Assembly: GCF_021869535.1 (NCBI RefSeq) | Contig: NW_026262582.1 | Location: 45,570,001-45,634,000, forward strand | DNA: 64,000 bases | Origin: Mytilus californianus | Lineage: Eukaryota | Direction of reading: 5' to 3' | Shown here: positions 7,261 to 37,702 of the stretch, in pieces | Layout of the letters: each line of letters starts with the position of its first letter | Position numbering within the stretch: position 1 is the stretch's first letter | Position numbers and translations under genes: made by a program | The notes under the pieces: generated by a model | What the model was told of the DNA's origin: nothing | The model's database searches: none | The model's input: the letters and a program-made list of their open reading frames with translations, nothing else

Positions 7261-8559
7261 ACTTGTGACAAAAGCTGAAAAATAATATGCGCCTTTATTT
7301 TATGCATACTTTGATCTTTTCAATTGAATGTTCGTTTTATTTTAATTATTAATCTTTGTATTGATAACTGATATACGCAATACAATTTTTTGTTTTGTGT
7401 AAGCCGTTTAAAGTGAAACCATTTGTCTCATTTGTTTTACCTGTCACGACTGGTTCCGTCATGCATTTAATGAATAATTTGTTACCATTTGACACCAAAT
7501 TGTAGTTAAGTCATCTATTTTCAGACTTTATCAATTTATAATTTAAAACGTATAACAGGCGAGCAGGAATTGTACATGGTGGATTCATTAGTGTTTGTAA
7601 ATTGTTCATCAGAAGTTGAAGCAATGGGAGAATTCTCAAAACTTTCTTCGTTTCAACAAAGGTAAATACTCATACCGTATAGCGGGTTATTTTTGCGGGG
7701 TGTTTATTTTCGCTTATTTTAACGGATAAATGAAAACCGCTAAAATAAATGTATGCATACGTTCGGTACTTTCTATTAGTTTCAGTCGATATACACGCAA
7801 TTTTGAAATTATTAATTAACAACCGTTCTTTCTAATAGCTAAAGCGTTTTGTGATCGATCCATTTGGTTTTTTTTCCAATTGGCAGATCAATAATAGTAT
7901 CTGTTAATTTTTAGATCAAGTTACAGCAAATGGGCTATGTCACATATATTGGTATAGTTTTGCATACAACTCCGACTCGTTGAACTATATCTGAAAATCG
8001 AAAAAAATAATGCATTTATCTCTTTTATCATCTGAAATATTACTGATAAAATTTTTTAAAAACATTTGTATAGACAGCACATAAAATTGGCGAAAAACCT
8101 TCTTAAGTTTGATGGGTATAAAATACCCGATTAAATGATTTGGAGTGATTTAAGGGAAAAAACAAAAAGTTGTCTGGAGGTCTGGAAAACCAGACCTTCG
8201 CCGACAAAACTTTATTACAAAAAGTATTATTTTCTCCTTGGTTGGGTATTAAATTCCAAACCAATATTTAAACGAAATATACAAATCTTTTCGGGCATTT
8301 ATTTGGAATAATAAATTGAAACAAATAGAAAGGAACATTTGTAGTTAAGAGACTAAAACGGAATGGTTTGGTATGATTAACTTTGTAATAGTAGACAAAT
8401 GCAATGTTTATACAAAATTAATCACTCGGATGAAGAAACTTGGAATATTATAGGTAATTTTATACAAATGCCCATAACTCTTTTTCACAACTAAGGAAAG
8501 TATATTAACTCAATGAGAAAGAAGAAATACTGAAAACTAGACTTCAAACTTATTCATTC

Positions 8560-9000
8560 AGTGTATGTTGACTTTTTTTTGTTTAAATGTCTTTTTGACC
8601 GAGTTAAGCTATTTCAATTGATATTTTATAGTGTGTCTTTTTGTGCTGTAATGTTACACTACTGTCTCAGGTTAGGGTGAAGGTTGGCCCCTGTTAAAAC
8701 GTTTAAACCAGATGCATTTCAATGCACCTGTCCTAGGTCAAGAGCCTGTTGTTCAGTGGTTGTCGTTTGTTGATGTGGTTCATAGGTGTTTCTTGTTTCT
8801 CGTTTTTTATATAGATTAGACCGTTTGTTTTCCTGTTTGAATTGTTTTACACAAGTCGTTTTGGGACCCTTTATAGCTTGCTGTTTGGTGCGAGGCTCCG
8901 TGTTGTAGGCCGTACTTTGACCTATAATTGTTAACTTTTTATACATTGTGACTTGGATGGAGAGTTGTCTTATTGGCACTCATACCACATCCTCTTATTT
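8560..9000 (-). mobile_element. High-copy interspersed repeat (PLE terminal-repeat-like family; ...gatgtggtatgagtgccaatgagacaactctcc...)
   Basis: The same sequence recurs at ~10480-10860, 15210-15600, 24690-24940, 44760-44985 and 58495-58900, and it abuts the PLE RT fragments. Confidence 0.7.
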
Positions 9001-9189
9001 ATATTGCTTGTATCTCCGCTATTGAATGTAAAAGAAGCTCTCAATGTTTTAAATAGTTCACCATGAGTAAAATAGTAGAATTTTGAAACGAAACCTTTCA
9101 AAGACTGTAATCATATATATATAACCGACTAACGGTACAAGAAATTGCTTAGCCGATTATTCAAAAAATAAAAATGCTATATCTAAAAT

Positions 9190-9560
9190 GTACATAGGTA
9201 TACTTAAGGGTACCAACGTTTTATCGAGTAAGCAGGACAATTCGTTAATTAAATTCGACAACTTAGATCTAAAAACAATTTCAGGTGTTGAAATAACACC
9301 ACAACAAATAATAGATCAGAATGATATTCAAGGCAAACTTAATCAAAATACCATACCGAAGTGGAAACTGAGTTTGCTGTAAGTATTGACTGGAACTCGG
9401 TTTGGGGTATTTCAAGAAATCTAGTTGTGAAAAAACAAAATTGGTGAATTCCAATTGAAGTTCATACATAACAGTATTTACACGGAAATAGACTACATCG
9501 ATTTGAACATTCACTGGTTCAAGATAACTGTCATTTTTGCAAAACACATACTGTAAAACG
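9190..9560 (+). mobile_element. Degenerate L1/Tx1-type LINE ORF2 C-terminal remnant
   Basis: Frameshifted pieces PKW/ETEFAVSIDWNSVW, EFQLKFIHNSIYT and GNRLHRF...DNCHFCK resemble the C-terminal cysteine-rich region of L1/Tx1 ORF2. It is followed by a ~178-bp local tandem duplication (9493-9840). Confidence 0.5.
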
Positions 9561-10479
9561 ATCTTCCCATTAATAACAGATTAAAAAACTATTTACATTA
9601 ATATATACGAACTATGCTCAAACTTGGTATACATACGAATGACAAAAAAAATTATTTAAACGGAATCAAACCTACATCGATTTGAACATTCATTAGTTCA
9701 AGATAACTTTCATTTTTGTAAAAATCACCTTGAAACACAAACTGTAAAACGATCTTCCCATTAGTAACAGAATAAAAAACTATTTACATTAATATATACG
9801 AACTATTTTCAAACCTGGTATACATACGGACGACAAAAGATAATTAGGTATAATAAAGGTACCGATGTACAGGAATTTTGAATATTTATTTAAAAACATG
9901 GACAGTTTTCGAATAACAAGTTTTGAAATTGACTTTTATAACCTTCAGGACAATATGTACTAGACATATCGTATATATATACGGATAAAAATGGATTTTT
10001 TTTGTGCACTATTAAAAGATATAAAAATACGAAAAGACGTGGATGATTGCCAACTGACGTAGAAGTCAACACCCATAGGTCCCTATTCGACCTTCAACAA
10101 TGAGCAAAATCCATACCGCATAGTCAGATATGTCAGGCCTAGAAATGACAAATGTTAAACGGTTGAAACGAGAAAACTAACGGTCTGATTTATGTACAAA
10201 ACAATTAATGAAAGATAATATAATATACAGCAACAAACGACAACCACTGAAAATCAGGCTCCTGATATTGGATTCTTGTTTGAAATCTTTTACATTTAAC
10301 ATTTCGGGGCCTTTTTAAATGACTATTCGATATGTGTTTTGCTTATTGTTGAAGGCCGAACGATGACCTATAGTTAACCTCAATGTCATTTGGTCTGTGG
10401 TGGAGTGTTGTCTCATTGGCAATAATACCCCATGTTCTTTTATACACACAGAATGTTAGAGTGTTAAACATAGATATAA

Positions 10480-12460
10480 AAAGATGTGATATGAGTGCCA
10501 ATGAGACAACTCACCATCCAAGAAAACCATTATAGGTCAAAGTACGGCCTTCAACACGGAGCATTGGCTCACACCGAACAGAAAGCTATAAAGGGCCCCA
10601 AAAATGACTAGTGTAAAACCGTTCAAACAGGAAAACGACAACAACTGAACATCAGGTTCCTGACTAAGGACAGGTGCAAACAAATACAGTTGAGTTAAAC
10701 GTTTTAATAGGCGCCAACCTTCACCCTAACCTGAAACAATAGTGTAACATCACAACATAGAAAGACACACTATGAAATATCAATTGAAATGGCTTAACTC
10801 AATCAAAAGACATATTAACAAAAACAAGTGAACATACACTAAACGAATAAATTTGATCTATGACACAATGTCAATACAAAGTTGATAAAAAGGGGGTGAG
10901 ATGTAAAACAATATCAGAAAGATAACCATAACCTTGGACAAAATGCCGCCATATAAAATAACCTACACAGGTAACTAAAAATAATTTTGTTGTAAGGTAT
11001 ACATGGCTGAGTACGGAAATATTGTTTACAAAATAAATAATTTTGTTGTTCATAGTACGAGAACAGAAGTGAAAATTTATCGTCATACCAAACACTTATC
11101 AAAGGTGGTATATATTAATAATAGTGAGACGAAATATAACATTAACATGATTAAATAAGTAAACATTAAATAACAAACCTGCATTACAAATTGTATCAAC
11201 AGGTCAAATTAACACAAAAGTACGATTTGAGAGAACTCGCAGTTACTGAAAGCCAGTTAAAAGCCAAAAACAATTAATGATAAAAAATCATGAATCAGAG
11301 ACTAAAATCAACTGAAACACATCCCAGGGATTTAGTGTTTTAACGTCATGGACAGTCAAAGAAGACATGACTTGTGCAATGCCAAAATAAAAGTATCGAC
11401 AGGCAGTAGGATAGTTAGGAGTTAACCTTTTAATAAATATGTATAATGTTATATATAGATAAGTAATCTCTATATAGAAAATGAACGTGGATGTGTATTT
11501 ATACTTCCCAAAAACCGTTTGAAAAGAATACAAATTTAGTTATGTTTTAACTTGCTGATGACAAAGTCGATATTTGTGCCAATGTAAATATATTCAAAGA
11601 TCTAATTACAACATTGGTAAGATAACTTTTACTAATAAGTTTGTTTAAAGGTTCGATGAGTTTACACATAGTGATTTCCGCGCTTTTAGTACAATATTAC
11701 CGTAAAATTTAAGATGTGAAATACCGTTTTTATTAAGTTTTCTACAGGTGCAGCCAAATTTACTAATCAAATCTTTGTTTCTATGAAAGAATTTAGTAAA
11801 AGTTTTAAGTAATTTATGGTAACGAAATCCCTGACTAAATAATTTACCAGTGATGCATTGATTACGTTCGTTAAAATCTATGTTATCACTACAAACACGG
11901 GCATAACGAACGAGTTGGGATATAAACACCGTATGATGGAGCCAAAGGAACATTGCCGTCTAAAAAAGGAAAATTAACAATAGGGAATGAAAAATCGTCT
12001 CTTTTGTCGTAAATTTTAGTATGGAGTTTCCCTTTAGAAATTGAAATGTCTAAATCTAGAAAAGGACTGTGTTTGCTTGCACCAACCTCACCCCCTTTTA
12101 AACCTGAGACAGTAGTGTAACAGTACAACATTAAACAAACTATTAAAATCAGTTGAAAAGTGCTTAACTCATTAGATCGATACAGAGTAGATAAAACAAC
12201 TAGCGAGAAAAAAAAACACAGACCGGATTTGGCAAGGAATTTGTAAATCCGTCACACAAAAAAAAACCACAAAGTACAGATCTAAGAGGTCTCACAGTAC
12301 TTACAGCTAGTTCAAAGCCAAAAACCACTCATCGAAAATCATGTTTCTAAGTCAGTATAAAGTTTGAAATCAGTTATTTGTTAAACGTAGACAAATTGTT
12401 AATCACAACAAAAAGAGAAATGTAAACACAATGCCATGTTTCATGAGCGATTCATGAGTA
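10480..12460 (-). mobile_element. 5'-truncated Penelope-like retroelement (RT C-terminus at ~11645-12070 flanked by terminal-repeat-like sequence)
   Basis: PFLDLDISISKGKLHTKIYDKRDDFSFPIVNFPFLDGNVPLAPSYGVY, then a frameshift, then ISQLVRYARVCSDNIDFNERNQCITGKLFSQGFRYHKLLKTFTKFFHR. Confidence 0.8.
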
Positions 12461-12644
12461 ACCTTTGCATCTCAGGAAACTTATATTAATCCATTTTTAG
12501 TAATTTCCAATGAACCAACGAGGCACCCTTAAAAAGTATTAAAGCCAACACAGTTTAGTATGTTCATTCAAATTGTTTGTTCACTCGAGTGAAATCTGTA
12601 GCCAGAAAAAAAAAGGTTAAGCAACAAACAATCAATCAGTCAAT

Positions 12645-12920
12645 CGCTGTAGCGTGCTTGCCCTGAGTGAGGGAAGTTATGGGTTCGATCCCAGGCCAAG
12701 TAAAACCAAATACTTGAAAATTGGTATTTGTTACTTTTCTGCATAATACTAGACATTTAGCAGTAAGAGCCCAGACTGTTCAGCTCGGAGTCAGAACAAT
12801 GACTCATGTCTTCCTGTGGTCTGTTATCGTTTTATCTAGCATGTTAAAAATCTTGCTCAGGATGTCGGTATTGTAAAAACCAAGGTTCATATTCACATCA
12901 CCATCTAGTTTATGCCATGG
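12645..12920 (+). mobile_element. tRNA-derived SINE (RUDI-like by recollection), degenerate
   Basis: B-box ggttcgatccc followed by aaaccaaa..aaaattggtatttgttacttttctgc. Paralogous copy at ~34045-34320. Confidence 0.6.
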
Positions 12921-12997
12921 TTAAACATTTTCTAATTTTATATTTAATGCATTCTTGAAGTTATTTTATGTCTCGTTGTCTTAACTCGTCGTCGCCA

Positions 12998-13045
12998 TCA
13001 GCACTTATCAATAACAGCTATTGCGTCAACCTCTAACTGCGCTCC
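12998..13045 (-). CDS. RIDA: RidA-family gene copy A, last exon (GAQLEVDAIAVIDKC*)
   Basis: tttttcag acceptor, phase 0; contains the conserved Glu (Salmonella E120 equivalent); ends in TGA. Confidence 0.9.
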   Translation of the reverse strand, partial: GAQLEVDAIAVIDKC

Positions 13046-14131
13046 CTGAAAAAAAGTTGACAAATTTTATATTATTGATTAAATATGTAAAAGAAAAGAT
13101 ACTTAGACCTGACTAAAACATAAATTAAAACAACTTTTTCTTATTTCATTAGAAATACAGAACAAACGGTACACGTATTCATATTGTATGCCTTTTTCTT
13201 ATTCTCATACGTTACAAAATTGTTGACTACAAAATGGTTGAACAATATGACTAGCGTTGTAAGACCTAAATTGCAATATTTGGAAAAAGAATATCAAAAG
13301 TGCAAAATGAACAAATCATAACACAAAGACAAAAAGTAAAAACCATTGTACAGAAAACCTCAGATTGACCACCAACAAGCTTACAAACAAAGGGGCGCCC
13401 CGGAATGGTTGCCAATTGTCTGCGATAATGATTCGTTCCATAACAGATTGGTTGTCTTATTTTGTCAAAGCTTAGGGTGCTGCCAATCCATAAAGTATCG
13501 AGAATTGTAAGTTAAATCTACTTCCATGACAATATGATCGTATAAATAAGTAGTAAGCCTTCAGTTATCTATGTTTACTTAGGCCCATGTTTCCATCGAC
13601 ACCAATACCTTGGACATCTATCTATTTATTATTATGGCACTATAAGAAAATGTACCGAGGACTTCACCAATATATTACAAGTCAGATTCGGACAACATTG
13701 ACCATTGTCCGTTCAGAATCTAAAGGACAATGGTTGATTAAATTGGTCGTACTGCAAAATACAAATAACGTCACGTCATTAATTGAATTTCCATTGTTCA
13801 GGACGTATTGAACCAATCCCGACTTTTTCATGGTTTTGGTGTACACTTTTGAGAATAATACCCAGAATGCATTAGATTCTGAAACGGCAAGTTATTTATA
13901 GATTACCAATTGACATCGTAGTTTATGGCACATCATTATTTTGATTTTCAAAGACCGTGTTTAATAGAAACATGAACCCTTAACAAATTTTGATGTACTA
14001 AGATATGCAGTAAAGTAAAGGGCCTCATTTCAATCTTTTATACTTATTAGCCAACCATTTCGTTGATAAGTCGAAAAGTCATCAATCAACTACTTCAGCA
14101 TAACCTCAAAAATTAAGATACAATTACTTAC

Positions 14132-14187
14132 TTGTGATATTGCTACTACTTGACAAGATGATCTAGCAGGGAAATCCTTTGGAAAGT
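14132..14187 (-). CDS. RIDA: RidA copy A, 56-bp exon (YFPKDFPARSSCQVVAISQ)
   Basis: ttttcag|...|gtaagt; FPAR motif with the catalytic Arg (R105 equivalent). Confidence 0.92.
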
Positions 14188-15026
14188 CTGAAAATTATAC
14201 AATATTAAATAATACATACATAAGTAATTATCTTTAAATAAGTCACTACGACAACTCAAATCGTGACATACAACAGATCAACATACAAAAAAGAGGACAG
14301 TTTGTAATAAAATAGTTAAATAAAGATCCAAATGTGTTCAGTATTAAAATTAAAGTTTAAATTTCATCACTACGGGTAACATTACAATACTTGAGGTGGC
14401 AAGTATTGTATTTTCCGGGAACTAGGTTGCTCTTTTGTGTACTGAGGTCAATGTATCTGAACACTGTGATTTGACAAAAAAAATAGCATCTACTGAACAT
14501 TTTTCCCAAGCTGAGGAATAGATCATTTGTAGAAAAATATGAAATATTTTCACATACAGGTGAAAATGAGTTTTGAGAAATTTTTTTATTTTGTATTCAC
14601 TGCATGATAAAAAAAAACAACCACTTAGCACTATTGGCCTTTGGTTTGTAAAGAGAGCAGAAAAATAAACGATCATCATATATGTTCGAATTTATTTCTG
14701 AATATTATAGTGAAAGTACTTCTGTTGACTGTGTATGCAGGTTCTGGGTCAGTGTTACAAAGTGGTGAAAATACGAAAAAGGCTATCATTATCTCTATTA
14801 CTACGAAATTGAAAAGATTATAGTCGTATGGATTGAGTCCCGCGGATTGTTTCCTTTTGGTTGAAATATTTAAAATGTATAAATGAGTAATCCTTCTAAT
14901 CCAATCGTTATATTCCGCTAACTTCAATCACTCTATTACCGAGAAATGATAACGGATACAGGGTGCTGAATTGTTTGATTTAATTAATGAGTTACCTCTT
15001 ATTCATATTATAAACTTTACACTCAC

Positions 15027-15095
15027 ATTTCATATAGACTGCATTAAAGGCAGAATACTCTCTTAAATCTGTCAGAAAAACTGTTACTTTGACAA
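15027..15095 (-). CDS. RIDA: RidA copy A, 69-bp exon (VVKVTVFLTDLREYSAFNAVYMK)
   Basis: tgtttcag|...|gtgagt; VVK.TVFL.D...F..VY motif; phases are consistent with the neighbouring exons. Confidence 0.92.
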
Positions 15096-16506
15096 CTGAA
15101 ACATGGATAATACGGTTCTAATTTGTGTATATAATTGTTGTTTGTAACTTTCTTTCAATAGCAAAAGTATATTATCACATGTGTAATAATATGACATTCA
15201 TAAAATAGATATAGGAAGATGTGGTATGAGTGCCAATGAGACAACTCTCCATCCAAGTGACAATTTATAAAAGTAAACCATTATAGGTCAAGGTACGGCC
15301 TTCAACACGGAGCATTGGCTCACACCGAACAGCAAGCTATAAAGGGCCCCGAACAATTACTAGTGTAAAACCATTCAAACGGAAAAACCAACGGTCTTAT
15401 CTATAAAAAAAAACGAGAAACGGGAAACACGTATGAACTACATAAACAGACGACAACTACTGTAATCAGATTCCTGACTTAGGACAGGTGCAAACATTTG
15501 CAGCGGGATTAAAAGTTTTAATGGTACCAAACCTTCTCCCTTTTCTGAAACAATTTTATAACATCACAACATAGAAAAACACACTATAAAATATAATAGA
15601 ATAGAAATAACCCTCACATACATTAGAATACTTATATGTACATACAGAATATTTCACTATCGATAATAATATGCTGGTATGTCTAAAATAAGATTAGTTT
15701 GTTTACTCATAGGAAATACATACACTAATAATGATACACTAAGTGTCATACAATATTTCATAGTCACATTGTATGAAGGTCGGAAGGAGTGTCATCCCAA
15801 TTTCCCGTAAAAATCAACGCTGAATACCAAATTCCGGAAGATTTAATCATACATTCCCTAGTCTCGATACGTGTAAATCTCAAATTTCCGCAAAAGAATA
15901 AAAGCCCAATCCATACGTCCCCGAAAAGATCCTCCCGCCTCTCTTTGGTGACTTCAAATATTTCATGTTCACATTTCTATCATAGAAGAACTTACTGAGA
16001 CAACGGAACACATGAATATAATAATTTTTCAATCTTAATATTTAAATATAAGTTATATTTGATGATAATACATTATAACATATATAAAGATTGAGACTGA
16101 ACACGAATGCGGCCACTTACATTTGAAACAAAAACCATCTCAAAAGTGATGTTTTATGGCATATTTGATAGATTTTACATATTTTAGCTTGTATTTGAGC
16201 GTCTTTAAAGCCAAATCATTTCAAATCTTTTACACAAACATATTGAATCGACTGAAGAAGACACTTAAAAGTTAAAAAAATGTCAAAAATCGGTCATCGG
16301 ATGTAGTTCGAATCTTAGACCAAAACTAGCCCTTACCGGACCTTCTCCTTTGATTTGTTCTCATCCTTAATATCTAGTAATATTTGCCATTTGGTGTTGA
16401 GCAAGCAATAATAAACAATTCATCAATCTATCAAAATAATTGATGAATGTTACATGTGTTACGTATGCCAGAAACGGAGAATAATCTATTTTCAGTATAT
16501 TTTCAT

Positions 16507-16538
16507 TATTCTTATTCTTATTCTTATTCTTTTTTATA

Positions 16539-16576
<38 letters not shown>

Positions 16577-16592
16577 GATTATTATTATTAAT
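16507..16592. repeat. (ATT)n / (ATTCTT)n microsatellite in a RidA intron
   Basis: Direct reading. The equivalent position in unit B is the N gap at 37503-37701. Confidence 0.95.
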
Positions 16593-16612
16593 ATTACAAT
16601 GAATGAACTCAC

Positions 16613-16667
16613 CATCCTTTAAACTACCACCAGCAGCCTCTAATACAGCACGAAAATTCTTGAATAT
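16613..16667 (-). CDS. RIDA: RidA copy A, 55-bp exon (IFKNFRAVLEAAGGSLKD)
   Basis: ttctacag|...|gtgagt; N...(V/I)L.AAG.S..D motif. Confidence 0.92.
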
Positions 16668-17084
16668 CTGTAGAATGAAACTTTTGTAACTAATTACGCC
16701 GCATTTAGAAACGCTATGAAAATTTCAGTAGATGATAAGAGAAGAAAAAAATTGTATTGTGTTTTGGCTACTTCCTCTTAGCATTAGATTGACATATTTT
16801 CTATTGTCTGTATGTGTATTAGTAAGTGACAACTAAACGACTGATGTTTTGATCAGGTATCCAAGGGTTATACCATGTATACAGGGGTAATGCTCCAATA
16901 CTTCGTCTGAAATTTAACCCCATAACTCTGTTTACCTTTGCAAATAGGTTTTCTTTACTCTGTTTTCCGTTCTTGATTACACTAGCAGAATTCAAAGATT
17001 GATTCATAGTTGAAAGTCTTAAAGATAATGGTTTTACTACAAGAATCACTCAAACGTAACATTTCCAGTGATCCATGCATTACA

Positions 17085-17430
17085 ATGAGGACAAGATCAG
17101 ATAAATCCTGCAAGACGGACATGTACACCTAAAGATCACTCCATACACAAAATATTGTTGACCTATTGCTTATGGTACAAAATGTATATAAGAAACAGAT
17201 GTAATCAAGAAAAATTTACATTGCCAATAAAGAATGAAAAGGAGATTAAGGTCAGAAGATACAAGCCAGAGAGACACGTATAGCTTACAATCATGCCATG
17301 CACCAACTATAGTTTACCTATTGCTTAAAGTATCTCAGAAACTATTGATTACAGTGACTTAACCAGGAAAACGTAAAATTGACCAATGTACCTTGAAAAT
17401 AGGGTCAAGGTTAGATGAACCCTTCCAGAC
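17085..17430. mobile_element. Tandem-core repeat of the Helitron/Helentron-derived non-autonomous (HINE-like) type, in a RidA intron
   Basis: Two diverged ~160-bp units (…acaaaatattgttgacctattgctt… / …accaactatagtttacctattgctt…). Paralog at ~38100-38400. The family assignment is from memory. Confidence 0.4.
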
Positions 17431-17477
17431 AAAGTAGTTGTTGTATGGAATACATTTTCATAACGATTTGTGCTCAC

Positions 17478-17583
17478 CTGTTCAGTTTCAGGAATAAGAC
17501 CACCAGGAACCAGTTGAAGTGTGACAGGGTCTACTCCTAATTGTCCAGACATGTATAGAGTATTTCCCGCCAAAACAGCTTGA
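17478..17583 (-). CDS. RIDA: RidA copy A, 106-bp exon (SQAVLAGNTLYMSGQLGVDPVTLQLVPGGLIPETEQ)
   Basis: tttgaag|...|gtgagc; SQAV...LY.SGQ.G.DP....LV.GG signature. Confidence 0.95.
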
Positions 17584-17689
17584 CTTCAAAAATTAAAACA
17601 TAAGAATAAGTCATTAGAAGAAAACAACAAAAGTACATATGTGTTTCAGAGTCGTCCACATGTCCAGCATTCTGCGACTAATAATATAT

Positions 17690-17837
17690 ATGCGTAGCTA
17701 AAGTCTTCTGAAATAGAAATAAAAAAGAAATATATTTAACTCTGACTGTGTAATAACATTTGGAATTATACCACAAGGAAATAGTTGAACGAGGAATAGA
17801 TCCTGTCACACTTCAACTGGTTTCTGGTGGTATAATT
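17690..17837 (+). pseudogene. Inverted partial copy of the RidA 106-bp exon and its upstream intron
   Basis: 17793-17837 on the plus strand encodes GIDPVTLQLVSGGII, antisense to the real exon at 17490-17540. 17690-17715 matches the intron upstream of copy C at 59490-59516. Confidence 0.85.
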
Positions 17838-19466
17838 TTAAATGTAATGACACGGTCAGATTCAAATATATTTCGGTTTTCTTTTGGTTTTTTTGTTGTA
17901 CTTTTTTTTATTTCAGAAACCTTTATCTTAGCATATATATTATCTTCGGTGTTTTTGAAGGGACTTACATTTGATATATGGGCGGAGGGAGGAGGATTTT
18001 AACAATATCTACAATTAAACATTTATATTAACAGCGCTTTAGCCTATTTTATGTGTTTAAATGCTTTTTCATGCCTGTTCATATCTATCTATTTATTACA
18101 AGAATAAGAATAAGTTTTTATTAAAAGAAGGGTCAAGGCTCTCATTTGTAAAACATTTTGCAATACTCGGAGTACAAAATATGTGCTCAAAATACCAAAT
18201 CCAGTATTTTGATATTTCTGAGTCTGTGTACGATAACCGTGCTCGGATTTTTTATGACCACGAGGCCATGTTCCAGGTTGTTCTGACTTTCATTTGCGCT
18301 CATAATAAATTTTTCATTTTTGCCATACGATATAATGTTGCTTTTGTACATCGGGAAAAGTCGGGAAAAACAATCAGATTAATCTTTGATGGACATTCCT
18401 ATTGGTGTCACAGTGCATTTCAACTGTTATTTACAAATATTCTGTTACATGTGTAAGAACGGATTGTAGAATATGTTAAATATCTCCAAATTTAACATTT
18501 TAAAAGAAGGTCATATGTAAGTTAGTTGATTGTGTTTACAGAATAGAGGATTGGAGAAAATATAGAATGGAGGATACTGAGCCAAAGAAATCAAAAAGAG
18601 AGAACAATGGGCGGGATTTACAAAAAAAACAAAGGTCCAATCCAAAAGTTCCCAAAAAGTTCCTTCCGCCTCTCATAAGTGCCTTCAAATATTTTACATT
18701 CACATTTCTATTCCAAAAGAACTCTCACGTTGAAAACTGAACACATAAATGATACATATTACAACGCACTACACGAAAAACAGATATGACAGACAGAAAC
18801 CTACGACAACCACTGAATTATCGCTCCCAACTTGGAAAGGATATATAAAAAAAAATTGGGCATGGTTCAACATGTTTGTGATTGTTAAAAATATCCCCTT
18901 CATCAGATCTACTCGAAGTACAAAAATTAACTGAAATCAAGACAAAAAACACAGTGTATCGATCAGAGGTCTTGTAGTTACTGCGAGATAGTTCGTAAAC
19001 AACTTATACATATATCACGTTCTGCCAGACTAGAGTTTCAATCAGTAAACATCCGACAGATTTAGTGCAAAGACTTCAGTCTATGATGTTTACGTTCAGA
19101 CGTTCATTTAAGAACATACTAATCTAGAAAGAACACATGTTCAATTAAGAAATCAATATATGATTGATTGATAAATTTTGAATTGTGTTCAGAGGCAAAT
19201 ATGTTCATGCATATTCAGAACAAAACCACATTAACACCAATTTTGCAAGGTGATTTGAGAGTTTCGACTGCATTTTTATTTTCAAAGCTGCTCCTAGCGG
19301 CAATTGTACGACAATATTATTCTCCCAACCATCTTCCACAAACTAGTTTTCTTTATTTATCGTGACTATTTTTTCTTTTTTTTTTATTTTGACAGATTTC
19401 TTGGATTATGTTTTTAATTGTTTGTTACTTTGTGGTATAATCATTAAGTTTTGAGTAATACATTAC

Positions 19467-19558
19467 CTGAAAGGTAAAGGGATTATTGGAGCTTTGTCTG
19501 TTTCAATTATTTTTTTCGTAACTGGGTTACAGTATGGTTTGTGTCTCGAACACGGTGG
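19467..19558 (-). CDS. RIDA: RidA copy A, 92-bp exon (PPCSRHKPYCNPVTKKIIETDKAPIIPLPFS)
   Basis: Strong acceptor ttcttcgttttgtttcag and donor ag|gtaatg. The phase-2 end joins the 106-bp exon. KKIIETDKAP corresponds to the RidA N-terminal K.I.T..AP motif. There is no ATG, so an upstream exon is required. Confidence 0.85.
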
Positions 19559-20683
19559 CTGAAACAAAACGAAGAAGCGACATAGGTACACATATTAATA
19601 GATATTGCTACATTTTTTTTTTTATATGGAACACTATTACTGTATTTTTTTTATTTTGTCATTTTTATAGACTACCACATTTTGAAGTTGCCTTGGAGTT
19701 CGTTATTTTTGTCATACTTTTATATGGTAATGTTGTTTTTTTTTTTGAGGAACCACATAAAATGATATAATAAAAGTACATATTATCAAAAAGAAAAAGA
19801 AAACAACTATATTATATCGTACACAATCACATCCTTCGAGAGTAATGGGGTTCAATATTTGTGTAATTATATTTAATCAACTCGGATTTATTATTATGTT
19901 GTTGTAAGCGAATATATATGTCATTATATATTTAAAAGGAAAATGGGGATGCAAACGGATTATCAAACGGGCTTTAAAACGGTTTCTTCCTGATTGGCCA
20001 ACTTTTATCAAATTACAGGTAAAAAAGTAATGAAATTATGCGGAACAATTGGGAAGTATAAATATTGGACAATCGGCAATTTGTGTGATAGTCGTTTGTT
20101 AGTGAAGCATATATTTATAGATAATTGATCAATGTAACTTATTAGATTTGCAATAAACATGCAGAAAAATTGGTATTTACATGCTTTATTGTGTTGATTG
20201 ATATTTAGTTACACTACCTTTCAAATTAAGAAGAATAATAGCTGAACGCTTGTGTAACCCATCTCCAGCTAAGGGGTTAAATTAAAGGTCACATGAATAC
20301 AGATTCAATGAGTTTAAATTATCGACTTGCACGTCTATTATACATCAGCGATGTTTTTGAGACTTTTTTTTACAAATTTGGTCCAAACTGACGGCTTATA
20401 ACGAAATATTATTTTCAAATTCCACTTTTATTTATACTTGAAACAGAAAGGATCGCATATTTAATTTTGGTTTAAATCGTAGGTTAAGGTCCTTTTCGCT
20501 ACTTTTCAAATTATCAACAATTTAATTCAAAATCTTAGTATGTTTTAACTACACAGAAGATAAAATGGACTCCAATAAACACAAATTGTAAATTGAACAA
20601 ATAGACAATTAATTATTTTAGAAGAATCACAGATAAAATTGAAATAGCAGATGTGTTTAGAGAAATAAAAAGATATGATAATG

Positions 20684-24689: not shown

Positions 24690-26560
24690 AGGGCCCAAAA
24701 ATGACTAGTGTAAAACCATTCAAATAGGAAAACCTATAAACCTAATCAACAAACGACAACAACTGAACATCAGGTTCCTGACTAAGGACAGGTGCAAACA
24801 AATGCAGTGGGTTTAAACGTTTTAATAGGTGCCAACCTTCCTTCACCTTAACCTGAAACAATAGTATAACATCACAAGATAGAACGACACACTATAAAGT
24901 ATCAATTGAAATGGCTTAACTCAATCAAAAGACATATGAACAAAAACAAGTGAACATACACTAAAAGAATAAATTTGATCTATGACACAATGTCAACATG
25001 GTCAATACAAAGTTGATAAAAAAGGGGGTGAGATGTAAAACAATATCAGAAAGATAACCAAAACCTTGGACAAAATGCCGCCATATAAAATAACGTACAC
25101 AGGTAACTAACAATAATTTTGTTGTAAGGTATACATGGCTAAGTACGGAAATATTGTTTACAAAATAAATAATTTTTTTGTTCATAGTACGAGAACAGAA
25201 GTGAAAATTTATCGTCATACCAAACACTTATCAAAGGTGGTATATATTAAAAATAGTGAGACGAAATATAACATTAACATTATTAAGTAAGTAAACATTA
25301 AATAACAAACCTGCATTACAAATTGTATCAACAGGTCAAATTAACACAAAAGTACGATTTGAGAGAACTCGCAGTTACTGAAGGCTAGTTAAAAGCCAAA
25401 CACAATTAATGATAAAAAATCATGCATCAGACTTTAAATCAACTGAAACACATCCCAGGGATTTAGTGTTTTAACGTCATGGACAGTCAAAGAAGACATG
25501 ACTTGCGCAATGCCAAAATAAAAGTATCGACAGGCAGTAGGATAGTTAGGAGTTTACCTTTTAATAAATATGTATAATGTTATACATAGATAAAGTAATC
25601 TCTATATAGAAAATGAACGTGGATGTTTATTTATACTTCCCAAAAAACCGTTTGAAAAGAATACAAATTTAGTTATGTTTTAATTTGCTGATGACAAAAT
25701 CGATATTTGTGCCAATGTAAATATATTCAAAGATCTATTTACAAAATTGGTAAGATAACCTTAACTAATAAGTTTGTTTAAAGGTTCGATGAGTTTACAC
25801 ATAGTGATTTCCGCGCTTTTAGTACAATATTACCGTAAAATTTAAGATGTGAAATTCCGTTTTCAATAAGTTTTCTACAGGTGCAGCCAAATTTACTAAT
25901 CAAATCTTTGTTTCTATGAAAGAATTTAGTAAAAGTTTTAAGTAATTTATGGTAACGAAATCCCTGACTTACCAGTGATGCATTGATTACGTTCGATTAA
26001 ATCTATGACATCACTACACACACGGGCATAACGAGCGAGTTGGGATATATAAACACCGTATGATGGAGCCAAAGGAACATCGCCGTCAAAAAAAGGAAAA
26101 TTAACAATAGGGAATGAAAAATCGTCTCTTTTGTCGTAACTTTTAGTATGGAGTCTCCCTTTAGAAATTGAAATGTCTAAATCTAGAAAAGGACTGTGTT
26201 TGCTTGCACCAAACCCACCCCCTTTTAAACCTGGGACAGTAGTGTAACATTAAACAAGCTATTAAAATCAGTTGAAAAGTGCTTAACTCATTAGATCGAT
26301 ACAGAGTAGATAAAACAACCAGCGAGAAAAAAAACACAGACCGGATTTGGCAGGGAATTTGTAAATCCCTCACACACAAACAAAAACACAAAGTACAGAT
26401 CTAAGAGGTCTCACAGTACTGGCAGCTAGTTCAAAGCCAAAAACCACTCATCGAAAATCATGTTTCTAAGACAGTATAAATTTTGAAATCAGTTATTTGT
26501 TAAACGTAGACAAATTGTTAATCACAACAAAAAGAGAAATTTTAAACACAATGCCATGCT
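24690..26560 (-). mobile_element. Unit-B copy of the truncated Penelope-like element (RT at ~25775-26198)
   Basis: Near-identical to 10590-12440. YGVYISQL is intact here, but there is an 8-bp deletion near 25968. Confidence 0.8.
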
Positions 26561-26605
26561 TGTGTAGGTGTATAAAAAGCAAACAAATCAAACTTATCAA
26601 AGCTA

Positions 26606-29600
26606 CAGATGGGTGCGGTCCTAACCTTGACAAAAGTTAACTTGGAGCAGACTTGTTGACTGCTTTCTAAGTTAACTTGAGAATTTTTAAGCAGACAAGC
26701 AAGTTAACTTCGTCGTTGGTAGACCAGACCTACGGTCTGCTTTTTTAGGACTGCTGCAGACCTATCGACAAGTCTGCTCCAGACCAGACCTGTGGACAAG
26801 TCTGCTTTTAACCAGTCCTGTGGACAGGTCTGCTTCTGACCAGACCTGTGGACAAGTCTGCTATTGACCAGACCTGTCTGCTTATGACAGATTATCGTGT
26901 TTAAGAGTTTTCATATCAGACTTGAGCTTTAATTAAAATATGTAAACAATATTCGCATTGTTTTTCCCCACAGAGCAAATTTCTTTACCCGCTAGACTCT
27001 ACTAGATATTATACAAAATTCTTTTTTTTTATTTGATATATTCTTATATACATAAACAAAAATGGCTATACAATAAAATAGAGCTATCATAAAGGAAATG
27101 AGAGTTGGTTTTTATATTAGAAGGCGGATAGAAAGGTTATCCAACGCATCGGAACAATATTCTTATATCATGGGATATCAACATCATTGTCGACGTTGCT
27201 TCGTTCCCCGTTTTTACCTGTCTCTTTCTAAATTTTACTTTATGCATTTATTCATGCATGGATATTTCATTGTTATTCAACTTGTTTGCATTGGATTTAC
27301 TATTCTATTTTCCGCAGAATATTCTAAAGATAATTGTACAGTGTCCGGATACATAGTACGGTGTGGTAAAACTATCAACAATCTCGTCAAATTCGTCAGA
27401 TTTGTCGAGAGATTCAAAATGTCTTTGCCGATTAATTGATATATGGGAAGTCCCAAAATTATACTCAATGTGCACTTGAATGAAATAGTTGCCACTTGAC
27501 GTTTAACTACAAACAAAATTAATCAACCGACATAATAGATTAACAGTACACTATTCCCAGAAGAGAACCTCATACTTTTTTATTAAAAAGTACAAATGAA
27601 TTCAGACATGTCAGTGTTGGTACTTGGATGATGCGGCCTAGTAGTTTTGTTTTACACACCATCCTGAATTACTATCTCTAGTGACTGTTCAATATTATGA
27701 ATACAGAGATGAAATGCTGACACTCTCAATTTATGCGGAAAAAATTTTGCATTAATTGTTTTCCAATATTATTGCTTACATTTGCGGTCCTACTAAAATG
27801 TGCACAGGAGCGCCAGGAGAAGACATAAAGGCGCTAGGAACAATACTATGCGGGTACATAGATTTACAAATTAATGTGCACATATGGTCAGTTTTGGTTG
27901 AAACGGTCAAATAATTTTGTTGTACAAGTCAGCATGAGGTATCAAAACTACTGAAATTTTGTTACGTATCAATATTTTGAATAAAAGGTGGACATGCTGG
28001 CACCCTAAATTGATGCCAACAAAAATTTGATGTTATTGTATTGCAATATTGCTGTCCATTGTACATGTTGTATTATACATTGAATCTAGACATAATAAAT
28101 ATGGCTGATTTACTATGCGGGTATATAGATTTACAAATTAAAGTGCACATATGGTCAGTTTTGGTCGATGCGGTCAAATAATTTTGTTGTACAAGTCAGC
28201 ATGAGGTATCAAAACTACTGAAATTTTGTTACGTATCAATATTTTGAATAAAAGGAGGACATGCTGGCACCATAAATTTATGCGAACAAAAATTTGTTGT
28301 TATTGTATTGCAATATTGCTGTCCATTGTATTATACATTGAATCCTGACATAAAAAATATGGCTGATTTTCTATGCGGGTATATAGATTTACAAATTAAA
28401 GTGCACATATGGTCAGTTTTGGTAGATGCAGTCAAATAATTTTGTTGTACAAGTCAGCATGAGGTATCAAAACTACTGAAATTTTGTTGCATATCAATAT
28501 TTTGAATAAAAGGAGGACAGGCTGGCACCCTATATTTATGCGAACAAAAATTTGTTGTTATTGTATTGCAATATTGCTGTCCATTGTATTATACATTGAA
28601 TCCTGACATAAAAAATATGGCTGATTTACTATGCCAGTATATAAATTTACAAATTAAAGTGCACATATGGTCAGTTTTGGTAGATGCAGTCAAATAATTT
28701 TGTTGTACAAGTCAGCATGAGGTATCAAAACTACTAAAATGTTGTTACATATCAATATTTTGAATAAAAGGAGGACATGCTGGTACCCTAAGTTGATGCG
28801 AACAAAAATTTGTTGTTATTGTATTGCAATATTGCTGTCCATTGTACATGTTGTATTATACATTGAATCCTGACATAAAAAATTTGGCTGATTTACTATG
28901 CGGGTATATAGATTTACAAATTAAAGTGCACATATGGTTAGTTTTGGTCGATGCGGTCAAATAATTGTGTTGTACATGTCAGCATGAGGTATCAAAACTA
29001 CTGAAATTTTGTTACGTATCAATATTTTGAATAAAAGGAGGACATGCTGGCACCCTAAGATTATGCGAACAAAAAATGTGTTGTTATTGTATTGCAATAT
29101 TGCTGTCCATTGTATTATACATTGAATCCTGACATAAAAAATATGGCTGATTTACTATGCGGGTATATAGATTTACAAATTAAAGTGCACATATGGTCAG
29201 TTTTGGTCGATGCGGTCAAATAATTTTGTTGTACAAGTCAGCATGAGGTATCAAAACTACTGAAATTTTGTTACGTATCAATATTTTGAATAAAAGGAGG
29301 ACATGCTGGCACCCTGAATTGATGCGAACAAAAATTTGCTATTATTGTATTGCAATATTGCTGTCCATTGTATTATACATTGAATCCTGACATAAAAAAT
29401 ATGGCCGATTTACTATGCGGGTATATAGATTTACAAATTTAAGTGCTCATATGGTCAGTTTTGGTCGATGCGGTCAAATAATTTTGTTGTACAAGTCAGC
29501 ATGAGGTATCAAAATTACTGAAATTTTGTTACGTATCAATATTTTGAATACAAGGAGGACATGCTGGCACTCAATATTTATGCGAACAAAAATTTGTTGT

Positions 29601-32600: not shown

Positions 32601-33819
32601 TTTGTTGTACAAGTCAGCATGAGGTATCAAAACTACTGAAATTTTGTTACGTATCAATATTTTGAATAAAAGGAGGACATAATGGCAACCTAAATTTATT
32701 CGAAAAAAAAATTGTTGTTATTGTATTTCAATATTGCTGTCATTTGTATTACACATTGAACCCCGACATAAAAATGTGGCTGATTTAATATGTGGGTATA
32801 TAGATTTACAAATTAAAGTGCACATATGGTCTGTGTTGGTCGATGCGGTCAAATAATTTTGTTGTACAAGTCAGCATGAGGTATCAAAACTACTGAAATT
32901 TTGTTACGTATCAATATTTTGAATAAAAGGAGGACATGCTGGCACCCTAAATTCATGCGAACAAAAATTTTAGTCATGTGTGTAAATGATGCTTTCATTT
33001 TGTATAATAAATTCTATCCTGAAATTAAAATATTGCTGATTGTGGCTACATAGATCAAGGACGTTTAACTAACAAGGACGTATAACTAACATCTAATATA
33101 CGTCCTTTCATAAATATACATAATAAAGTGCAAATATGGTTGAATTTGATAGGTATTGGAATATATATATTCAATGCCCGTTATCATTGTAACCAAGATC
33201 GTTTTTTAATTTATAGATTGGCAGATCACAGATAAATTTGTGTTACAAGCAACGTTTTATGTGTACTTTATTTTCAAATATTTATATTTAATCCTGTTTA
33301 TAAAATAACGGAAGTACTAATTTTACTTTATTTTCGATGTTTATACTACGAAACAAATTAAGATATTGAAAAATATTATTATAAAATCGATGTAGAGCGG
33401 TCCTAGTTACAAGTTAACTTAGTGTTGAGCAGACCAGTCAAAAGTTAACTTGGGAACAGGTCTGGTTTCGATCGAATTTGTCAAAGCAAAAGTTAACTTA
33501 TGTTAACTTTGTGGCAGGACTGGTTTCGAAGTTAACTTATGTTAACTTTAGGGCAGGACTAGTTTCGAAGTTAACTTATGTTAACTTATGACAGGACTGG
33601 TTCGAAGTTAACTTATATCAATAGCGGACCTGTTTCCAAGTTAACTTTTTGGCAGACATAAAAACAGTCCTATGACCAAGTCCGCTTTTCAAGTTAACAA
33701 GATTATGGTCCTAGGACTGGTCAGAGCAGTCCTAAATCCGGTCACAGGTTAACTTTGACCAGTCCAAATGACTGGTTATCAAGTTAACTTGCTGTACAGG
33801 TTAGGACTGCACCTATCTG
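26606..33819. mobile_element. 7.2-kb non-autonomous TIR DNA transposon with TA target-site duplication (Tc1/mariner-type ends)
   Basis: TA|cagatgggtgcggtcctaacct (26606-26627) ... aggttaggactgcacctatctg|TA (33798-33819); the TIRs match at 20/22. Subterminal arrays are rich in the aagttaactt palindrome. No transposase ORF. Confidence 0.85.
27844..32970. repeat. Satellite array, ~19.7 units of 258 bp
   Basis: Unit starts at 27844, 28111, 28369, 28627, 28894, 29153, 29411, 29669, 29927, 30199, 30457, 30715, 30973, 31230, 31488, 31746, 32013, 32271, 32529 and 32786. Confidence 0.97.
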
Positions 33820-34044
33820 TATCAAGAAAAGAAGACCGATTCGTGAGTAACCTTTGCATCTCTAGGAAACTTATATTAATCCATTTTTAGTAACTTGTAA
33901 TAAACCAACGAGGCACCCTTAAAAAGTATTAAAGCCAACACAGTTTAGTATATTCATTCAAATTGTTTGTTCACTCGAGTGAAATCTGTAGCCAGAAAAA
34001 AAAAGAAAGGTTAAGCAACAAACAATCAATCAATCAGTCAAACG

Positions 34045-37701: not shown

Positions 37702-37702
37702 C

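What the first reader, a model, noticed from the sequence alone, without database searches (positions are those of the whole stretch)
12998..19558. RidA paralogs with a novel Cys-containing N-terminal extension and a divergent substrate-pocket rim
Copies A and B assemble into open 141-aa frames (426 nt including the stop). They keep the catalytic Arg (R105 equivalent) and Glu (E120 equivalent). However, the widely conserved IGPYSQA reads PLPFSQA (Tyr17 to Phe) and VAALPKG reads VVAISQG/VVAISIG. Upstream of the usual RidA start region is an extra (P/T)PCSRHKPYC(N/K)PVT segment with two Cys, entered through a splice acceptor, so another coding exon must precede it. Canonical RidA is a ~130-aa protein starting just before K.I.T..AP. 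A two-Cys extension plus an extra exon suggests retargeting (secretory or organellar) and possibly a neofunctionalised, lineage-expanded RidA subfamily. That functional reading is inference.
Basis: partly seen in the sequence, partly recalled or inferred. Interest (0 to 1): 0.7.

Follow-up and report, generated by a model that had tools for sequence, protein, structure and literature searches.

The report
Mussel-only secreted RidA gene cluster
The window holds three tandem copies of a mussel-specific offshoot of the housekeeping enzyme RidA that has gained a secretion-signal exon and a cysteine-bearing N-terminal extension. The copy at the reported coordinates is an intact but "headless" duplicate that lacks that first exon.

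Summary
On the minus strand, six exons (19467-19558 down to 12998-13045) with good AG/GT sites give a 426-nt, 141-aa open frame without an ATG. A second copy, B (34396-40606), is 98% identical in its exons. Both are RidA-type proteins: the catalytic Arg and the Glu are kept, Tyr17 is Phe, and the loop reads AISQ/AISI.

The predicted upstream exon exists for B at 45311-45379. It encodes a hydrophobic signal-peptide-like leader plus a basic RRRK linker, and ends in phase 0 on a GTAAGT donor. A third, decayed copy C lies on the plus strand (exon 1 at 50200-50277, exons 3-6 at 59577-61507, no exon 2).

Copy A, the one reported, has no such exon. The A/B duplication breaks inside intron 1 (20682/41750).

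Database relatives with the same leader and extension occur only in Mytilus (five species, several paralogues). Mytilus also keeps a separate canonical 140-aa RIDA, which is 51% identical to B. All five core intron positions and phases match a canonical bivalve RIDA gene, so the family arose by duplication of the animal gene plus gain of a 5' exon, not by transfer from bacteria.

Expression is not shown: one RNA-seq run gave no reads on exons 2-4 of A or B. Function is inferred to be an extracellular imine deaminase or binder. This is a new variant of a known kind and of moderate interest.

The parts
19467..19558 (-). Copy A exon 2. It encodes the Cys extension (PPCSRHKPYCNPVT) followed by the start of the RidA core (KKIIETDKAPIIPLPF). 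It ends in phase 2.
   Evidence: Acceptor ttgtttcag and donor gtaatg. Aligns to residues 27-56 of P0002. The canonical exon 1/2 boundary has the same position and phase.
17478..17583 (-). Copy A exon 3 (SQAVLAGNTLYMSGQLGVDPVTLQLVPGGLIPETEQ).
   Evidence: PDB RidA hits at E 3e-8. PF01042 at E 1.7e-4.
16613..16667 (-). Copy A exon 4.
15027..15095 (-). Copy A exon 5.
   Evidence: PF01042 at E 2e-3.
14132..14187 (-). Copy A exon 6. It holds the catalytic Arg (FPARSSCQVVAISQ).
12998..13045 (-). Copy A exon 7 (GAQLEVDAIAVIDKC plus TGA). It holds the Glu120 equivalent and the conserved C-terminal Cys.
8184..20682 (-). Duplication unit that holds copy A. Its upstream end (20682) lies in what is intron 1 of copy B, so exon 1 and the promoter were not copied.
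   Evidence: blastn of A against B and alignment A1.
45311..45379 (-). Copy B exon 1. It runs from the ATG through 23 codons: a signal-peptide-like leader plus NQT and RRRK. Phase 0, GTAAGT donor.
   Evidence: tblastn with P0003, 83% identity, E 1e-9. Sequence. Hydropathy.
34396..40606 (-). Copy B exons 2-7 (40515-40606, 38450-38555, 37703-37757, 36429-36497, 35541-35596, 34396-34443). With exon 1 they give a 164-aa open frame. The donor of exon 4 abuts the N run 37503-37701.
50200..50277 (+). Copy C exon 1. It runs from the ATG through 26 codons (MRSVLVVLIIASASQA..SRRSK). Phase 0, GTAAGT donor.
   Evidence: tblastn with P0002, E 2.5e-4. Sequence.
59577..61507 (+). Copy C exons 3-6 (59577-59682, 59913-59967, 60389-60457, 61452-61507). 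Exon 2 is not detectable. Exon 7 is expected inside the N run 62510-62818.
   Evidence: The exons are identical to RefSeq XP_052080763.1 (P0007) over exons 3-6.
17792..17837 (+). Inverted 46-nt copy of part of exon 3 inside intron 2 of copy A. The counterpart in B is at 38757-38802.
26559..33833 (.). 7.2-kb insertion in the 3' flank of copy B, absent from the A unit.

Best explanation
The region is part of a tandem cluster of a RidA paralogue family found here only in Mytilus, derived from the ordinary animal RIDA gene.

Origin. After duplication, the ancestral first exon became an internal exon. Its former 5' flank now encodes a short extension, P-x-x-R-H-K/R-x-x-C-x-P/S-V, whose second Cys is invariant. 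A new 5' exon was added that encodes a hydrophobic secretion-type leader followed by a basic patch. The C-terminus was shortened and ends in a conserved Cys.

The three copies in the window:
- Copy B is the complete gene: 7 exons, 164 aa.
- Copy A, the reported coordinates, is a partial tandem duplicate of exons 2-7. Its breakpoint lies in intron 1, so on its own it has no start codon, no leader and no promoter. It is still intact. I lean slightly (about 55:45) towards it being a young, silent relic rather than a body spliced to B's first exon.
- Copy C has lost exon 2 and is decaying.

Likely mechanism (inferred). The full-length product enters the secretory pathway and loses its leader. It may also be cut or glycosylated at the NQT/RRRK linker. 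It then folds as a RidA trimer, perhaps pinned by a disulfide between the extension Cys and the C-terminal Cys. With the carboxylate-binding Arg kept, it would bind or hydrolyse 2-imino/enamine acids outside the cell.

Shown: gene structures, homology, intron identity, the leader exon, and restriction to Mytilus among the proteins returned by the searches.
Inferred: secretion, the disulfide, enzymatic activity, and expression.
For: - Gene models and open frames.
- Leader exons. The best 10-residue Kyte-Doolittle mean is 3.2-3.6, against 0.9 for the canonical N-terminus, and 3-4 basic residues sit at the exon end.
- Relatives with leader plus extension occur only in M. galloprovincialis, M. coruscus, M. 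trossulus, M. edulis and M. californianus. The next hits are bacterial (54% identity) and canonical bivalve RIDA (45-47%).
- A separate canonical Mytilus RIDA exists: XP_052103868.1 and orthologues. B is 51% identical to it, while Mytilus and Ostrea canonical RIDAs are 74% identical.
- All five core introns of the Sinanodonta canonical RIDA gene (L001) have the same positions and phases (2,0,1,1,0) as in copies A and B.
- In the tree the secreted clade has 99/99 support and the canonical animal clade 99/96.
- P0002 and P0089 pass the TIGR00004 RidA cut-off (132 and 134 bits against 106) and PF01042.
- The AlphaFold model of P0002 has core pLDDT 93-99 and TM 0.93-0.95 to goat and human RidA.
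- The duplication breakpoint is placed. No exon 1 lies upstream of A.
- The M. trossulus orthologue has all 7 exons.
- A versus C gives dN/dS 0.31.
Against: - No transcript evidence. The RNA-seq run X5 (10.3 M reads read) put no read on exons 2-4 of A. Reads from B would also have laid there, because the exons are 98-99% identical. The tool warns that a lack of depth is no finding.
- No spliced Logan-derived protein of this clade appeared, whereas the canonical gene has many.
- A and B themselves are not in the protein collection.
- SignalP or an equivalent could not be run.
- The extension has only moderate or low model confidence (pLDDT 53-77).
- The protein tree does not place the clade inside molluscan RIDA. 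It rejects a sister relation to Mytilus canonical RIDA (AU p 0.004), so the age of the duplication is unclear.
- For copy A, exon-limited conservation (8/426 against 121/1622 in the flanks) argues against a long-dead relic.
Confidence: 0.75

Rival explanations
1. Copy A is functional. Its exons 2-7 are spliced to an upstream first exon outside its own duplication unit. The most plausible source is exon 1 of copy B (45311-45379), by read-through and long-range splicing, so that B and A act as two alternative bodies of one transcription unit. A new, unrecognised first exon is the other possibility.
For: - All six exons, splice sites and the frame are intact.
- Divergence from B is 1.9% in exons against 5.2-7.7% in introns and 7.5% in the 150-nt flanks. 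This gives P about 0.002 under a model in which A has been neutral since the duplication.
- In M. edulis and M. trossulus the orthologous gene has RefSeq isoforms with two alternative signal-peptide first exons several kb apart, so long-range choice of 5' exon occurs in this family.
- A is on the same strand as B and downstream of it.
Against: - The splice would span 25.8 kb, passing B's stop and 3' end and a 7.2-kb transposon/satellite.
- No reads were seen.
- The A-B changes are 6 non-synonymous to 2 synonymous, giving omega 0.9.
- dS is itself low (2 changes over 98 synonymous sites), which fits recent conversion or a poor neutral yardstick as well as selection.
- No candidate first exon with a good donor and phase 0 lies in 19559-26600.
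Confidence: 0.35
2. The N-terminal exon is not a secretion signal. It would be a mitochondrial or other leader, or an artefact of gene prediction, and the proteins would stay intracellular.
For: - No signal-peptide predictor or experiment was available.
- RidAs with organelle leaders are known in plants and yeast (my own knowledge).
- No proteomic or transcript data were found.
Against: - The leader has one or two basic residues, then an uninterrupted run of 11-15 uncharged, mostly Leu/Val/Ile residues, then small residues (VCA, SQA). This is the classic n-h-c layout, not an amphipathic Arg-rich presequence.
- It is conserved in frame and phase in B, in C and in models made by different pipelines for five species.
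- Extra conserved Cys residues fit an oxidising compartment.
Confidence: 0.08
3. The family was acquired from bacteria. Its closest non-Mytilus relatives are bacterial exported (lipoprotein-type) RidAs.
For: - After Mytilus, the best hits are metagenomic or bacterial RidAs at 54-57% identity, some with leaders (P0094, P0097). Canonical bivalve RIDA scores 45-47%.
- The tree leaves the clade in a polytomy with bacterial groups.
Against: - Five of five intron positions and phases are identical to a canonical bivalve RIDA gene.
- Exon 3 matches mammalian RidA best among solved structures.
- Joining the clade to all animal RIDAs costs only 0.34 lnL (AU p 0.31).
- The stem branch is long (0.37), so long-branch attraction is expected.
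Confidence: 0.02
4. These are simply the organism's ordinary RIDA orthologues, and the extension and motif variants are typical of bivalves.
For: None was found beyond general RidA homology.
Against: Mytilus has a separate canonical 140-aa RIDA on another chromosome-scale record. Oysters, scallops, clams, unionids and gastropods have the canonical form without leader or extension.
Confidence: 0.01

Closest known systems
Canonical animal RIDA / UK114 / hp14.5 (2-iminobutanoate/2-iminopropanoate deaminase), e.g. Mytilus californianus XP_052103868.1, goat 1nq3, human 1oni
   Same: - RidA fold: model TM 0.93-0.95, rmsd 1.3-1.5 A.
- Catalytic Arg and the Glu are kept.
- All five core intron positions and phases are identical.
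- Orthologues pass the TIGR00004 and PF01042 cut-offs.
   Different: - Only 46-51% identity, whereas canonical genes are 62-74% identical across phyla.
- Has an extra 5' exon with a hydrophobic leader and basic linker, and a 14-residue Cys extension.
- GPY is replaced by LPF, and AALPKG by VAISQG or VAAPLG.
- The C-terminus is short and ends in Cys.
- Multi-copy and tandem, where metazoans typically have one RIDA (bioRxiv 10.64898/2026.06.05.730449).
Predicted, uncharacterised Mytilus proteins: VDI59496.1/VDI59497.1 (M. galloprovincialis), XP_063412433.1/434.1 (M. trossulus), XP_071148919.1/920.1 (M. edulis), CAC5365450.1 (M. coruscus), XP_052080229.1 and XP_052080763.1 (M. californianus)
   Same: Same family. 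B is 80-85% identical to the first group. Copy C equals XP_052080763.1 over exons 3-6. Leader, linker, extension and C-terminal Cys are the same.
   Different: - A and B are not in the protein collection.
- A and B carry AISQ/AISI where the closest orthologues have AAPL.
- Database names (deaminase-like, rutC family protein, hypothetical) say nothing of secretion.
Organelle-targeted RidAs (plant chloroplast RidA, yeast Mmf1); from my own knowledge, not tested here
   Same: A RidA core re-addressed by an N-terminal targeting extension.
   Different: The destination is an organelle rather than the secretory pathway. Those proteins have no Cys extension and no added C-terminal Cys.
Ixodes RidA with hydrophobic N-terminal leader (XP_042142633.1, V5IBI0_IXORI)
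   Same: An animal RidA-family protein with a signal-peptide-like N-terminus.
   Different: 35% identity to B, a very long branch, no Cys extension, and probably an independent origin.
Salmon RidA-1/RidA-2 paralogues (PMC7311433; 6tcc, 6tcd)
   Same: Duplicated animal RidA genes with diverged properties.
   Different: They arose by whole-genome duplication, both lack a leader, and both are canonical in length.
Bacterial exported RidA-like proteins with lipoprotein-type leaders (P0094, P0097)
   Same: RidA core behind an export leader, 48-55% identity.
   Different: Prokaryotic and intron-less. They are not the source of the mussel genes.

Membership tests
Rid superfamily (Pfam PF01042, YjgF/YER057c/UK114) | Significant match to the family profile | tested here: met
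   Single exons give sub-threshold but specific matches: exon 3 22 bits, exon 5 18 bits, copy C exon 3 23 bits. The orthologue P0002 scores 112.5 bits against a cut-off of 27.3. The joined window model was not handed to the tool.
RidA subfamily (TIGR00004) | Score above the curated subfamily cut-off (106.25 bits) | tested here: met
   P0002 scores 132 and P0089 134.4 bits. The more divergent paralogue P0091 scores 99.5, just below the cut-off. This was tested on orthologues 78-81% identical to B, not on the window model itself.
RidA subfamily | Invariant carboxylate-binding Arg (Arg105 E. coli / Arg107 human), needed for imine hydrolysis (PMC4433059) | tested here: met
   FPAR is present in exon 6 of A, B and C and in all relatives. 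It is an invariant column in alignment A2.
RidA subfamily | Tyr17 and Glu120 equivalents | tested here: inconclusive
   Glu is kept (LEVD). Tyr is Phe in A and B and in most paralogues, and Ile in P0091. Alanine replacements of these residues had little effect in Salmonella RidA (PMC4433059), so the change is not disqualifying.
RidA subfamily | Chorismate-mutase-like fold of the monomer | tested here: met
   AlphaFold model of P0002: core pLDDT 93-99. Foldseek top hits are goat, human and rat RidA with TM 0.93-0.95.
RidA subfamily | Homotrimer with active sites at subunit interfaces; imine/enamine deaminase activity | not testable with these tools
   Needs expression, size-exclusion chromatography or a crystal structure, and LAAO- or IlvA-coupled assays.
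Animal RIDA gene lineage | Shared intron positions and phases with canonical metazoan RIDA | tested here: met
   Five of five introns agree, with phases 2,0,1,1,0, when compared with Sinanodonta woodiana RIDA in L001.
Canonical RIDA orthologue of the species | Groups with canonical bivalve RIDA; ~135-140 aa starting MAG(I/V)VRK; single copy | tested here: not met
   A separate canonical gene exists (P0333). The secreted clade is a distinct 99/99 group, and a sister relation to Mytilus canonical RIDA is rejected (AU p 0.004).
Classical secretory proteins | Cleavable N-terminal signal peptide (n-h-c regions) | tested here: inconclusive
   The sequence layout and hydropathy fit, and the model shows a helix over residues 3-15. 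No SignalP run and no localisation data.

The most novel reading that the evidence does not exclude
Mussels have turned the intracellular metabolite-repair enzyme RidA into a family of extracellular, disulfide-stabilised imine/enamine deaminases or imino-acid binders. These would work in haemolymph, mucus or a secretory gland, for example on the 2-imino acids released by secreted amino-acid oxidases, the reaction used in vitro to assay RidA (PMC5979572, PMC7311433). In addition, the locus may run as one transcription unit with alternative leaders and alternative bodies, in which B's exon 1 is spliced either to B's exons 2-7 or to A's.
Probability: 0.15. Interest if true: 0.7.

Novelty: new variant of a known kind. 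Interest (0 to 1): 0.5.

Why it matters
RidA is regarded as a housekeeping, intracellular damage-control enzyme, and animals are said to have a single copy. A genus-restricted, tandemly expanded, fast-evolving clade that has gained a secretion leader and extra cysteines would show the fold being recruited outside the cell. It would also give a tractable case of re-addressing a protein by gaining a 5' exon. It raises a testable question: which reactive imines or enamines matter in mussel extracellular fluids or glands?

For annotation, the work shows three things:
- The copy at the reported coordinates is a headless duplicate.
- B is a complete gene missing from the protein sets searched.
- C is decaying.

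Tried and rejected
- Exon 1 inside the duplicated 1.1 kb upstream of A's exon 2. No ATG-to-GT exon ending in phase 0 exists there. Two alternative acceptors inside exon 2 (near 19523 and 19498), combined with a phase-1 mini-exon, remain purely hypothetical. They are disfavoured because the extension is conserved at protein level across paralogues.
- An internal promoter with an alternative first exon homologous to the MKVLK mini-exon of the RefSeq model of copy C (window 55752). The regions do not align.
- Exon 2 in copy C. It was not found with five different exon-2 peptides or by blastn.
- Exon 1 for copy A. It was not found with tblastn or with short-word blastn over 19559-34395.
- Reads. 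The one RNA run gave nothing on the exons. The "RNA?" contig runs X1 and X2 proved to be genomic DNA, because a contig crosses exon 3 and both introns.
- Multi-repeat RidA proteins (P0008-P0013). They come from short metagenome contigs, not from mussels.
- ORFs of 113-131 aa in the window (18061-18456, 27098-27439, 49350-49712). They have no Pfam match.
- Literature searches for RidA in Mytilus or bivalves found nothing relevant.
- The look-up of encoding contigs found no gene on record for P0002.

Full report
**1. What is in the sequence**

The window is AT-rich (about 31% G+C) and is eukaryotic. On the minus strand between 12998 and 19558 lie six short open segments. Each is bounded by a pyrimidine-rich AG acceptor and a GT donor: 19467-19558, 17478-17583, 16613-16667, 15027-15095, 14132-14187 and 12998-13045.

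A second copy, B, has the same structure at 34396-40606 and differs at 8 nt and 5 residues. tblastn with the model also found a third, more divergent copy, C, on the plus strand, with exons 3-6 at 59577-61507.

- PLPFSQA and FPAR.
- LEVD.
- VVAISQG in A and VVAISIG in B.
- The extension (P/T)PCSRHKPYC(N/K)PVT.

The frame has no ATG upstream of the internal Met of LYMSGQ. An in-frame stop lies just upstream of the acceptor. A preceding coding exon is therefore required.

**2. It is a RidA**

- Exon 3 alone hits goat, rat and human RidA structures at E about 3e-8 and Pfam PF01042 at E 1.7e-4.
- Exon 5 hits PF01042 at E 2e-3.
- A phmmer scan of exon 3 against 1.84 billion representatives returned full-length relatives.
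- The best of them, P0002 (167 aa), passes PF01042 at 112 bits and the RidA-subfamily model TIGR00004 at 132 bits against a cut-off of 106.
- Its AlphaFold model has a RidA core at pLDDT 93-99 and superposes on goat and human RidA with TM 0.93-0.95.
- The Arg needed for imine hydrolysis is invariant.
- Tyr17 is Phe. According to PMC4433059, alanine at the Tyr17 and Glu120 positions hardly affects Salmonella RidA, so I give that change little weight.

**3. The missing exon is a secretion-type leader**

P0002 and P0003 begin with a hydrophobic leader and a basic patch (MRSVLVVLFLVCSVCA..TRKRL and MKYVLVVLLLVCAF..KRRK). This is joined directly to the same Cys extension. tblastn of these N-termini on the window found two matching exons.
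- One is on the minus strand at 45311-45379, 4.7 kb upstream of B's exon 2. It is 83% identical to P0003 (E 1e-9), begins with ATG, and ends after 23 codons in phase 0 on AAG|GTAAGT.
- The other is on the plus strand at 50200-50277, upstream of C. It has 26 codons, phase 0 and the same donor.

With exon 1, B is a 164-aa open frame. The leaders have one or two basic residues and then 11-15 uncharged, mostly aliphatic residues. Their best 10-residue hydropathy is 3.2-3.6, against 0.9 for the canonical N-terminus. Small residues follow (VCA or SQA), and 3-4 Lys/Arg sit at the exon end. This is the classic signal-peptide layout. I could not run SignalP, so secretion remains an inference.

**4. Copy A has no such exon**

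Homology between A and B runs from A's 3' flank up to 20682 in A and 41750 in B, and stops there, inside what is intron 1 of B. The duplicated units are 8184-20682 and 24339-41750. The A unit carries a 2.1-kb insertion.

Between A's exon 2 and B's 3' end (19559-34395) neither tblastn nor short-word blastn finds a leader exon. No ATG exon with a reasonable donor ending in phase 0 is present either. A is therefore a headless partial duplicate.

It is nevertheless intact. It differs from B by 1.9% in exons, against 5.2-7.7% in introns and 7.5% in the 150 nt flanking the exons. If introns are the neutral yardstick, that is unlikely for a copy that has drifted since the duplication (P about 0.002). 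On the other hand, the eight changes split 6 non-synonymous to 2 synonymous (omega 0.9), and synonymous divergence is itself low. I cannot separate selection from recent conversion or recent death, and I put the odds near even.

**5. Copy C is decaying**

C has its own leader exon and intact exons 3-6. Over these it matches RefSeq XP_052080763.1 of M. californianus exactly. The mini-exon MKVLK of that model is at window 55752. No exon 2 can be found. Exon 1 (phase 0) cannot be joined in frame to exon 3, which needs two bases from the preceding exon. Exon 7 would fall in the N run 62510-62818, which I left alone. A versus C gives dS 0.23 and dN/dS 0.31, so the family was under purifying selection for most of its history.

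**6. Where the family comes from and who has it**

A word-index search with P0002 lists relatives with leader and extension only from five Mytilus species, several per genome and on the same contigs or chromosomes. After them come bacterial RidAs (54-57%) and canonical unionid RIDA (45-47%).

Searches with canonical bivalve RIDAs show that Mytilus also has an ordinary 140-aa RIDA, on a different chromosome-scale record. These are XP_052103868.1 in M. californianus and its orthologues in M. galloprovincialis and M. edulis. B is 51% identical to it, whereas Mytilus and oyster canonical proteins are 74% identical and Mytilus and mammal 62%.

The bacterial look-alikes prompted an origin test. In the canonical RIDA gene of Sinanodonta woodiana (L001), all five introns sit at the same codon positions and phases (2,0,1,1,0) as in A and B. 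The family is therefore a duplicate of the animal gene. What was exon 1 in the ancestor is now internal exon 2, and the leader exon is an addition.

In maximum-likelihood trees the secreted clade is monophyletic (99/99) on a long stem, and the canonical animal clade is 99/96. Joining the two costs almost nothing (AU p 0.31). Placing the secreted clade as sister of Mytilus canonical RIDA is rejected (p 0.004). That could mean an older duplication or a long-branch effect, and I leave the age open.

Within the clade there are at least three paralogue lineages. RefSeq isoforms X1 and X2 of M. edulis and M. trossulus join two alternative leader exons to the same body. In the M. trossulus locus L002 both leader exons and all seven exons are present.

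**7. Conserved features of the extension**

Across paralogues the extension reads P-x-x-R-H-(K/R)-x-x-C-x-(P/S)-V. The first Cys varies (C, W or Y), and the second is invariant. So is the C-terminal Cys wherever the C-terminus is intact. A disulfide between them is a reasonable guess for a secreted protein, but I could not measure distances. The extension has only pLDDT 53-77 in the monomer model.

**8. Expression**

The only true RNA-seq run offered (X5, raw reads) was laid on 16600-22599. Of 10.3 million records read, none lay on exons 2, 3 or 4. The few reads laid belong to repeats. A and B exons differ by 1-2 bases, so B transcripts would have been caught too. The tool warns that missing depth is no finding, and only about 6% of one run of unknown tissue was read.

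Runs X1 and X2 are genomic: a contig crosses exon 3 and both introns. One X6 contig carries exon 2 with a TAA at codon 24 and stops matching exactly at the acceptor. It could be a spliced E1-E2 transcript of another, broken copy, or another paralogue. I could not look further.

No Logan-derived full-length protein of the clade turned up, while the canonical gene has many. So expression is probably low or restricted.

**9. Verdict**

- The function (an extracellular RidA) and the expression are inferred.
- The proteins exist in databases as unnamed predictions, and I found no paper on them.
- I rate it a new variant of a known kind, of moderate interest.

**10. Limits and rules observed**

- The joined (spliced) models of A and B were built only inside scripts, for local alignment, dN/dS and trees. 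They were not handed to any search or folding tool. Database orthologues were used instead.
- N runs were neither filled nor looked up.

Noticed in passing
window 17792-17837 (A) and 38757-38802 (B): A 46-nt inverted copy of part of exon 3 sits in intron 2 about 250 nt upstream of exon 3. It is 87-89% complementary to the exon, present in A and B and absent from C. It could pair with the exon in the pre-mRNA.
   Followed up: partly
window 19310-19557 (run X6, record 17): A 275-nt public contig of the same species label covers exon 2 and the following intron with 8 differences. These include CCA to TAA at codon 24 and the B-type Lys at codon 11. Its first 27 letters stop matching exactly at the splice acceptor. 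It is either a partly spliced transcript of a broken copy or another paralogue.
   Followed up: no
window 19924-19997 (A), the equivalent in B, and 54958-55013 (C): A CCAAT box and a TATA-like block in intron 1, about 370-440 nt upstream of exon 2, are conserved between A and B and 80% matched in C. This may be an intronic regulatory element.
   Followed up: partly
window 26559-33833 and 8537-10632: There are insertions relative to the other duplication unit: 7.2 kb in B's 3' flank (the TIR/satellite element of note s1-347464) and 2.1 kb in the A unit.
   Followed up: partly
window 16520-16590; N run 37503-37701: An (ATT)n microsatellite lies next to the donor of A's exon 4. At the same place in B the assembly has an N run that abuts the exon-4 donor.
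   Followed up: no
L002 5246-5320 and 10001-10069 (M. trossulus): Two alternative signal-peptide first exons lie upstream of one RidA body, matching RefSeq isoforms X1 and X2. Fragments of another copy (exon-2-like and exon-3-like pieces on the other strand) lie between them.
   Followed up: partly
P0024/P0326 (Ixodes scapularis, I. ricinus, I. persulcatus): Ticks have a RidA-family protein with a hydrophobic N-terminal leader. It is apparently an independent case of an exported animal RidA.
   Followed up: no
window 55752-55768: The mini-exon MKVLK used by the RefSeq model of copy C (XP_052080763.1) is present in the window. This supports the genome being Mytilus californianus or a very close relative.
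   Followed up: partly
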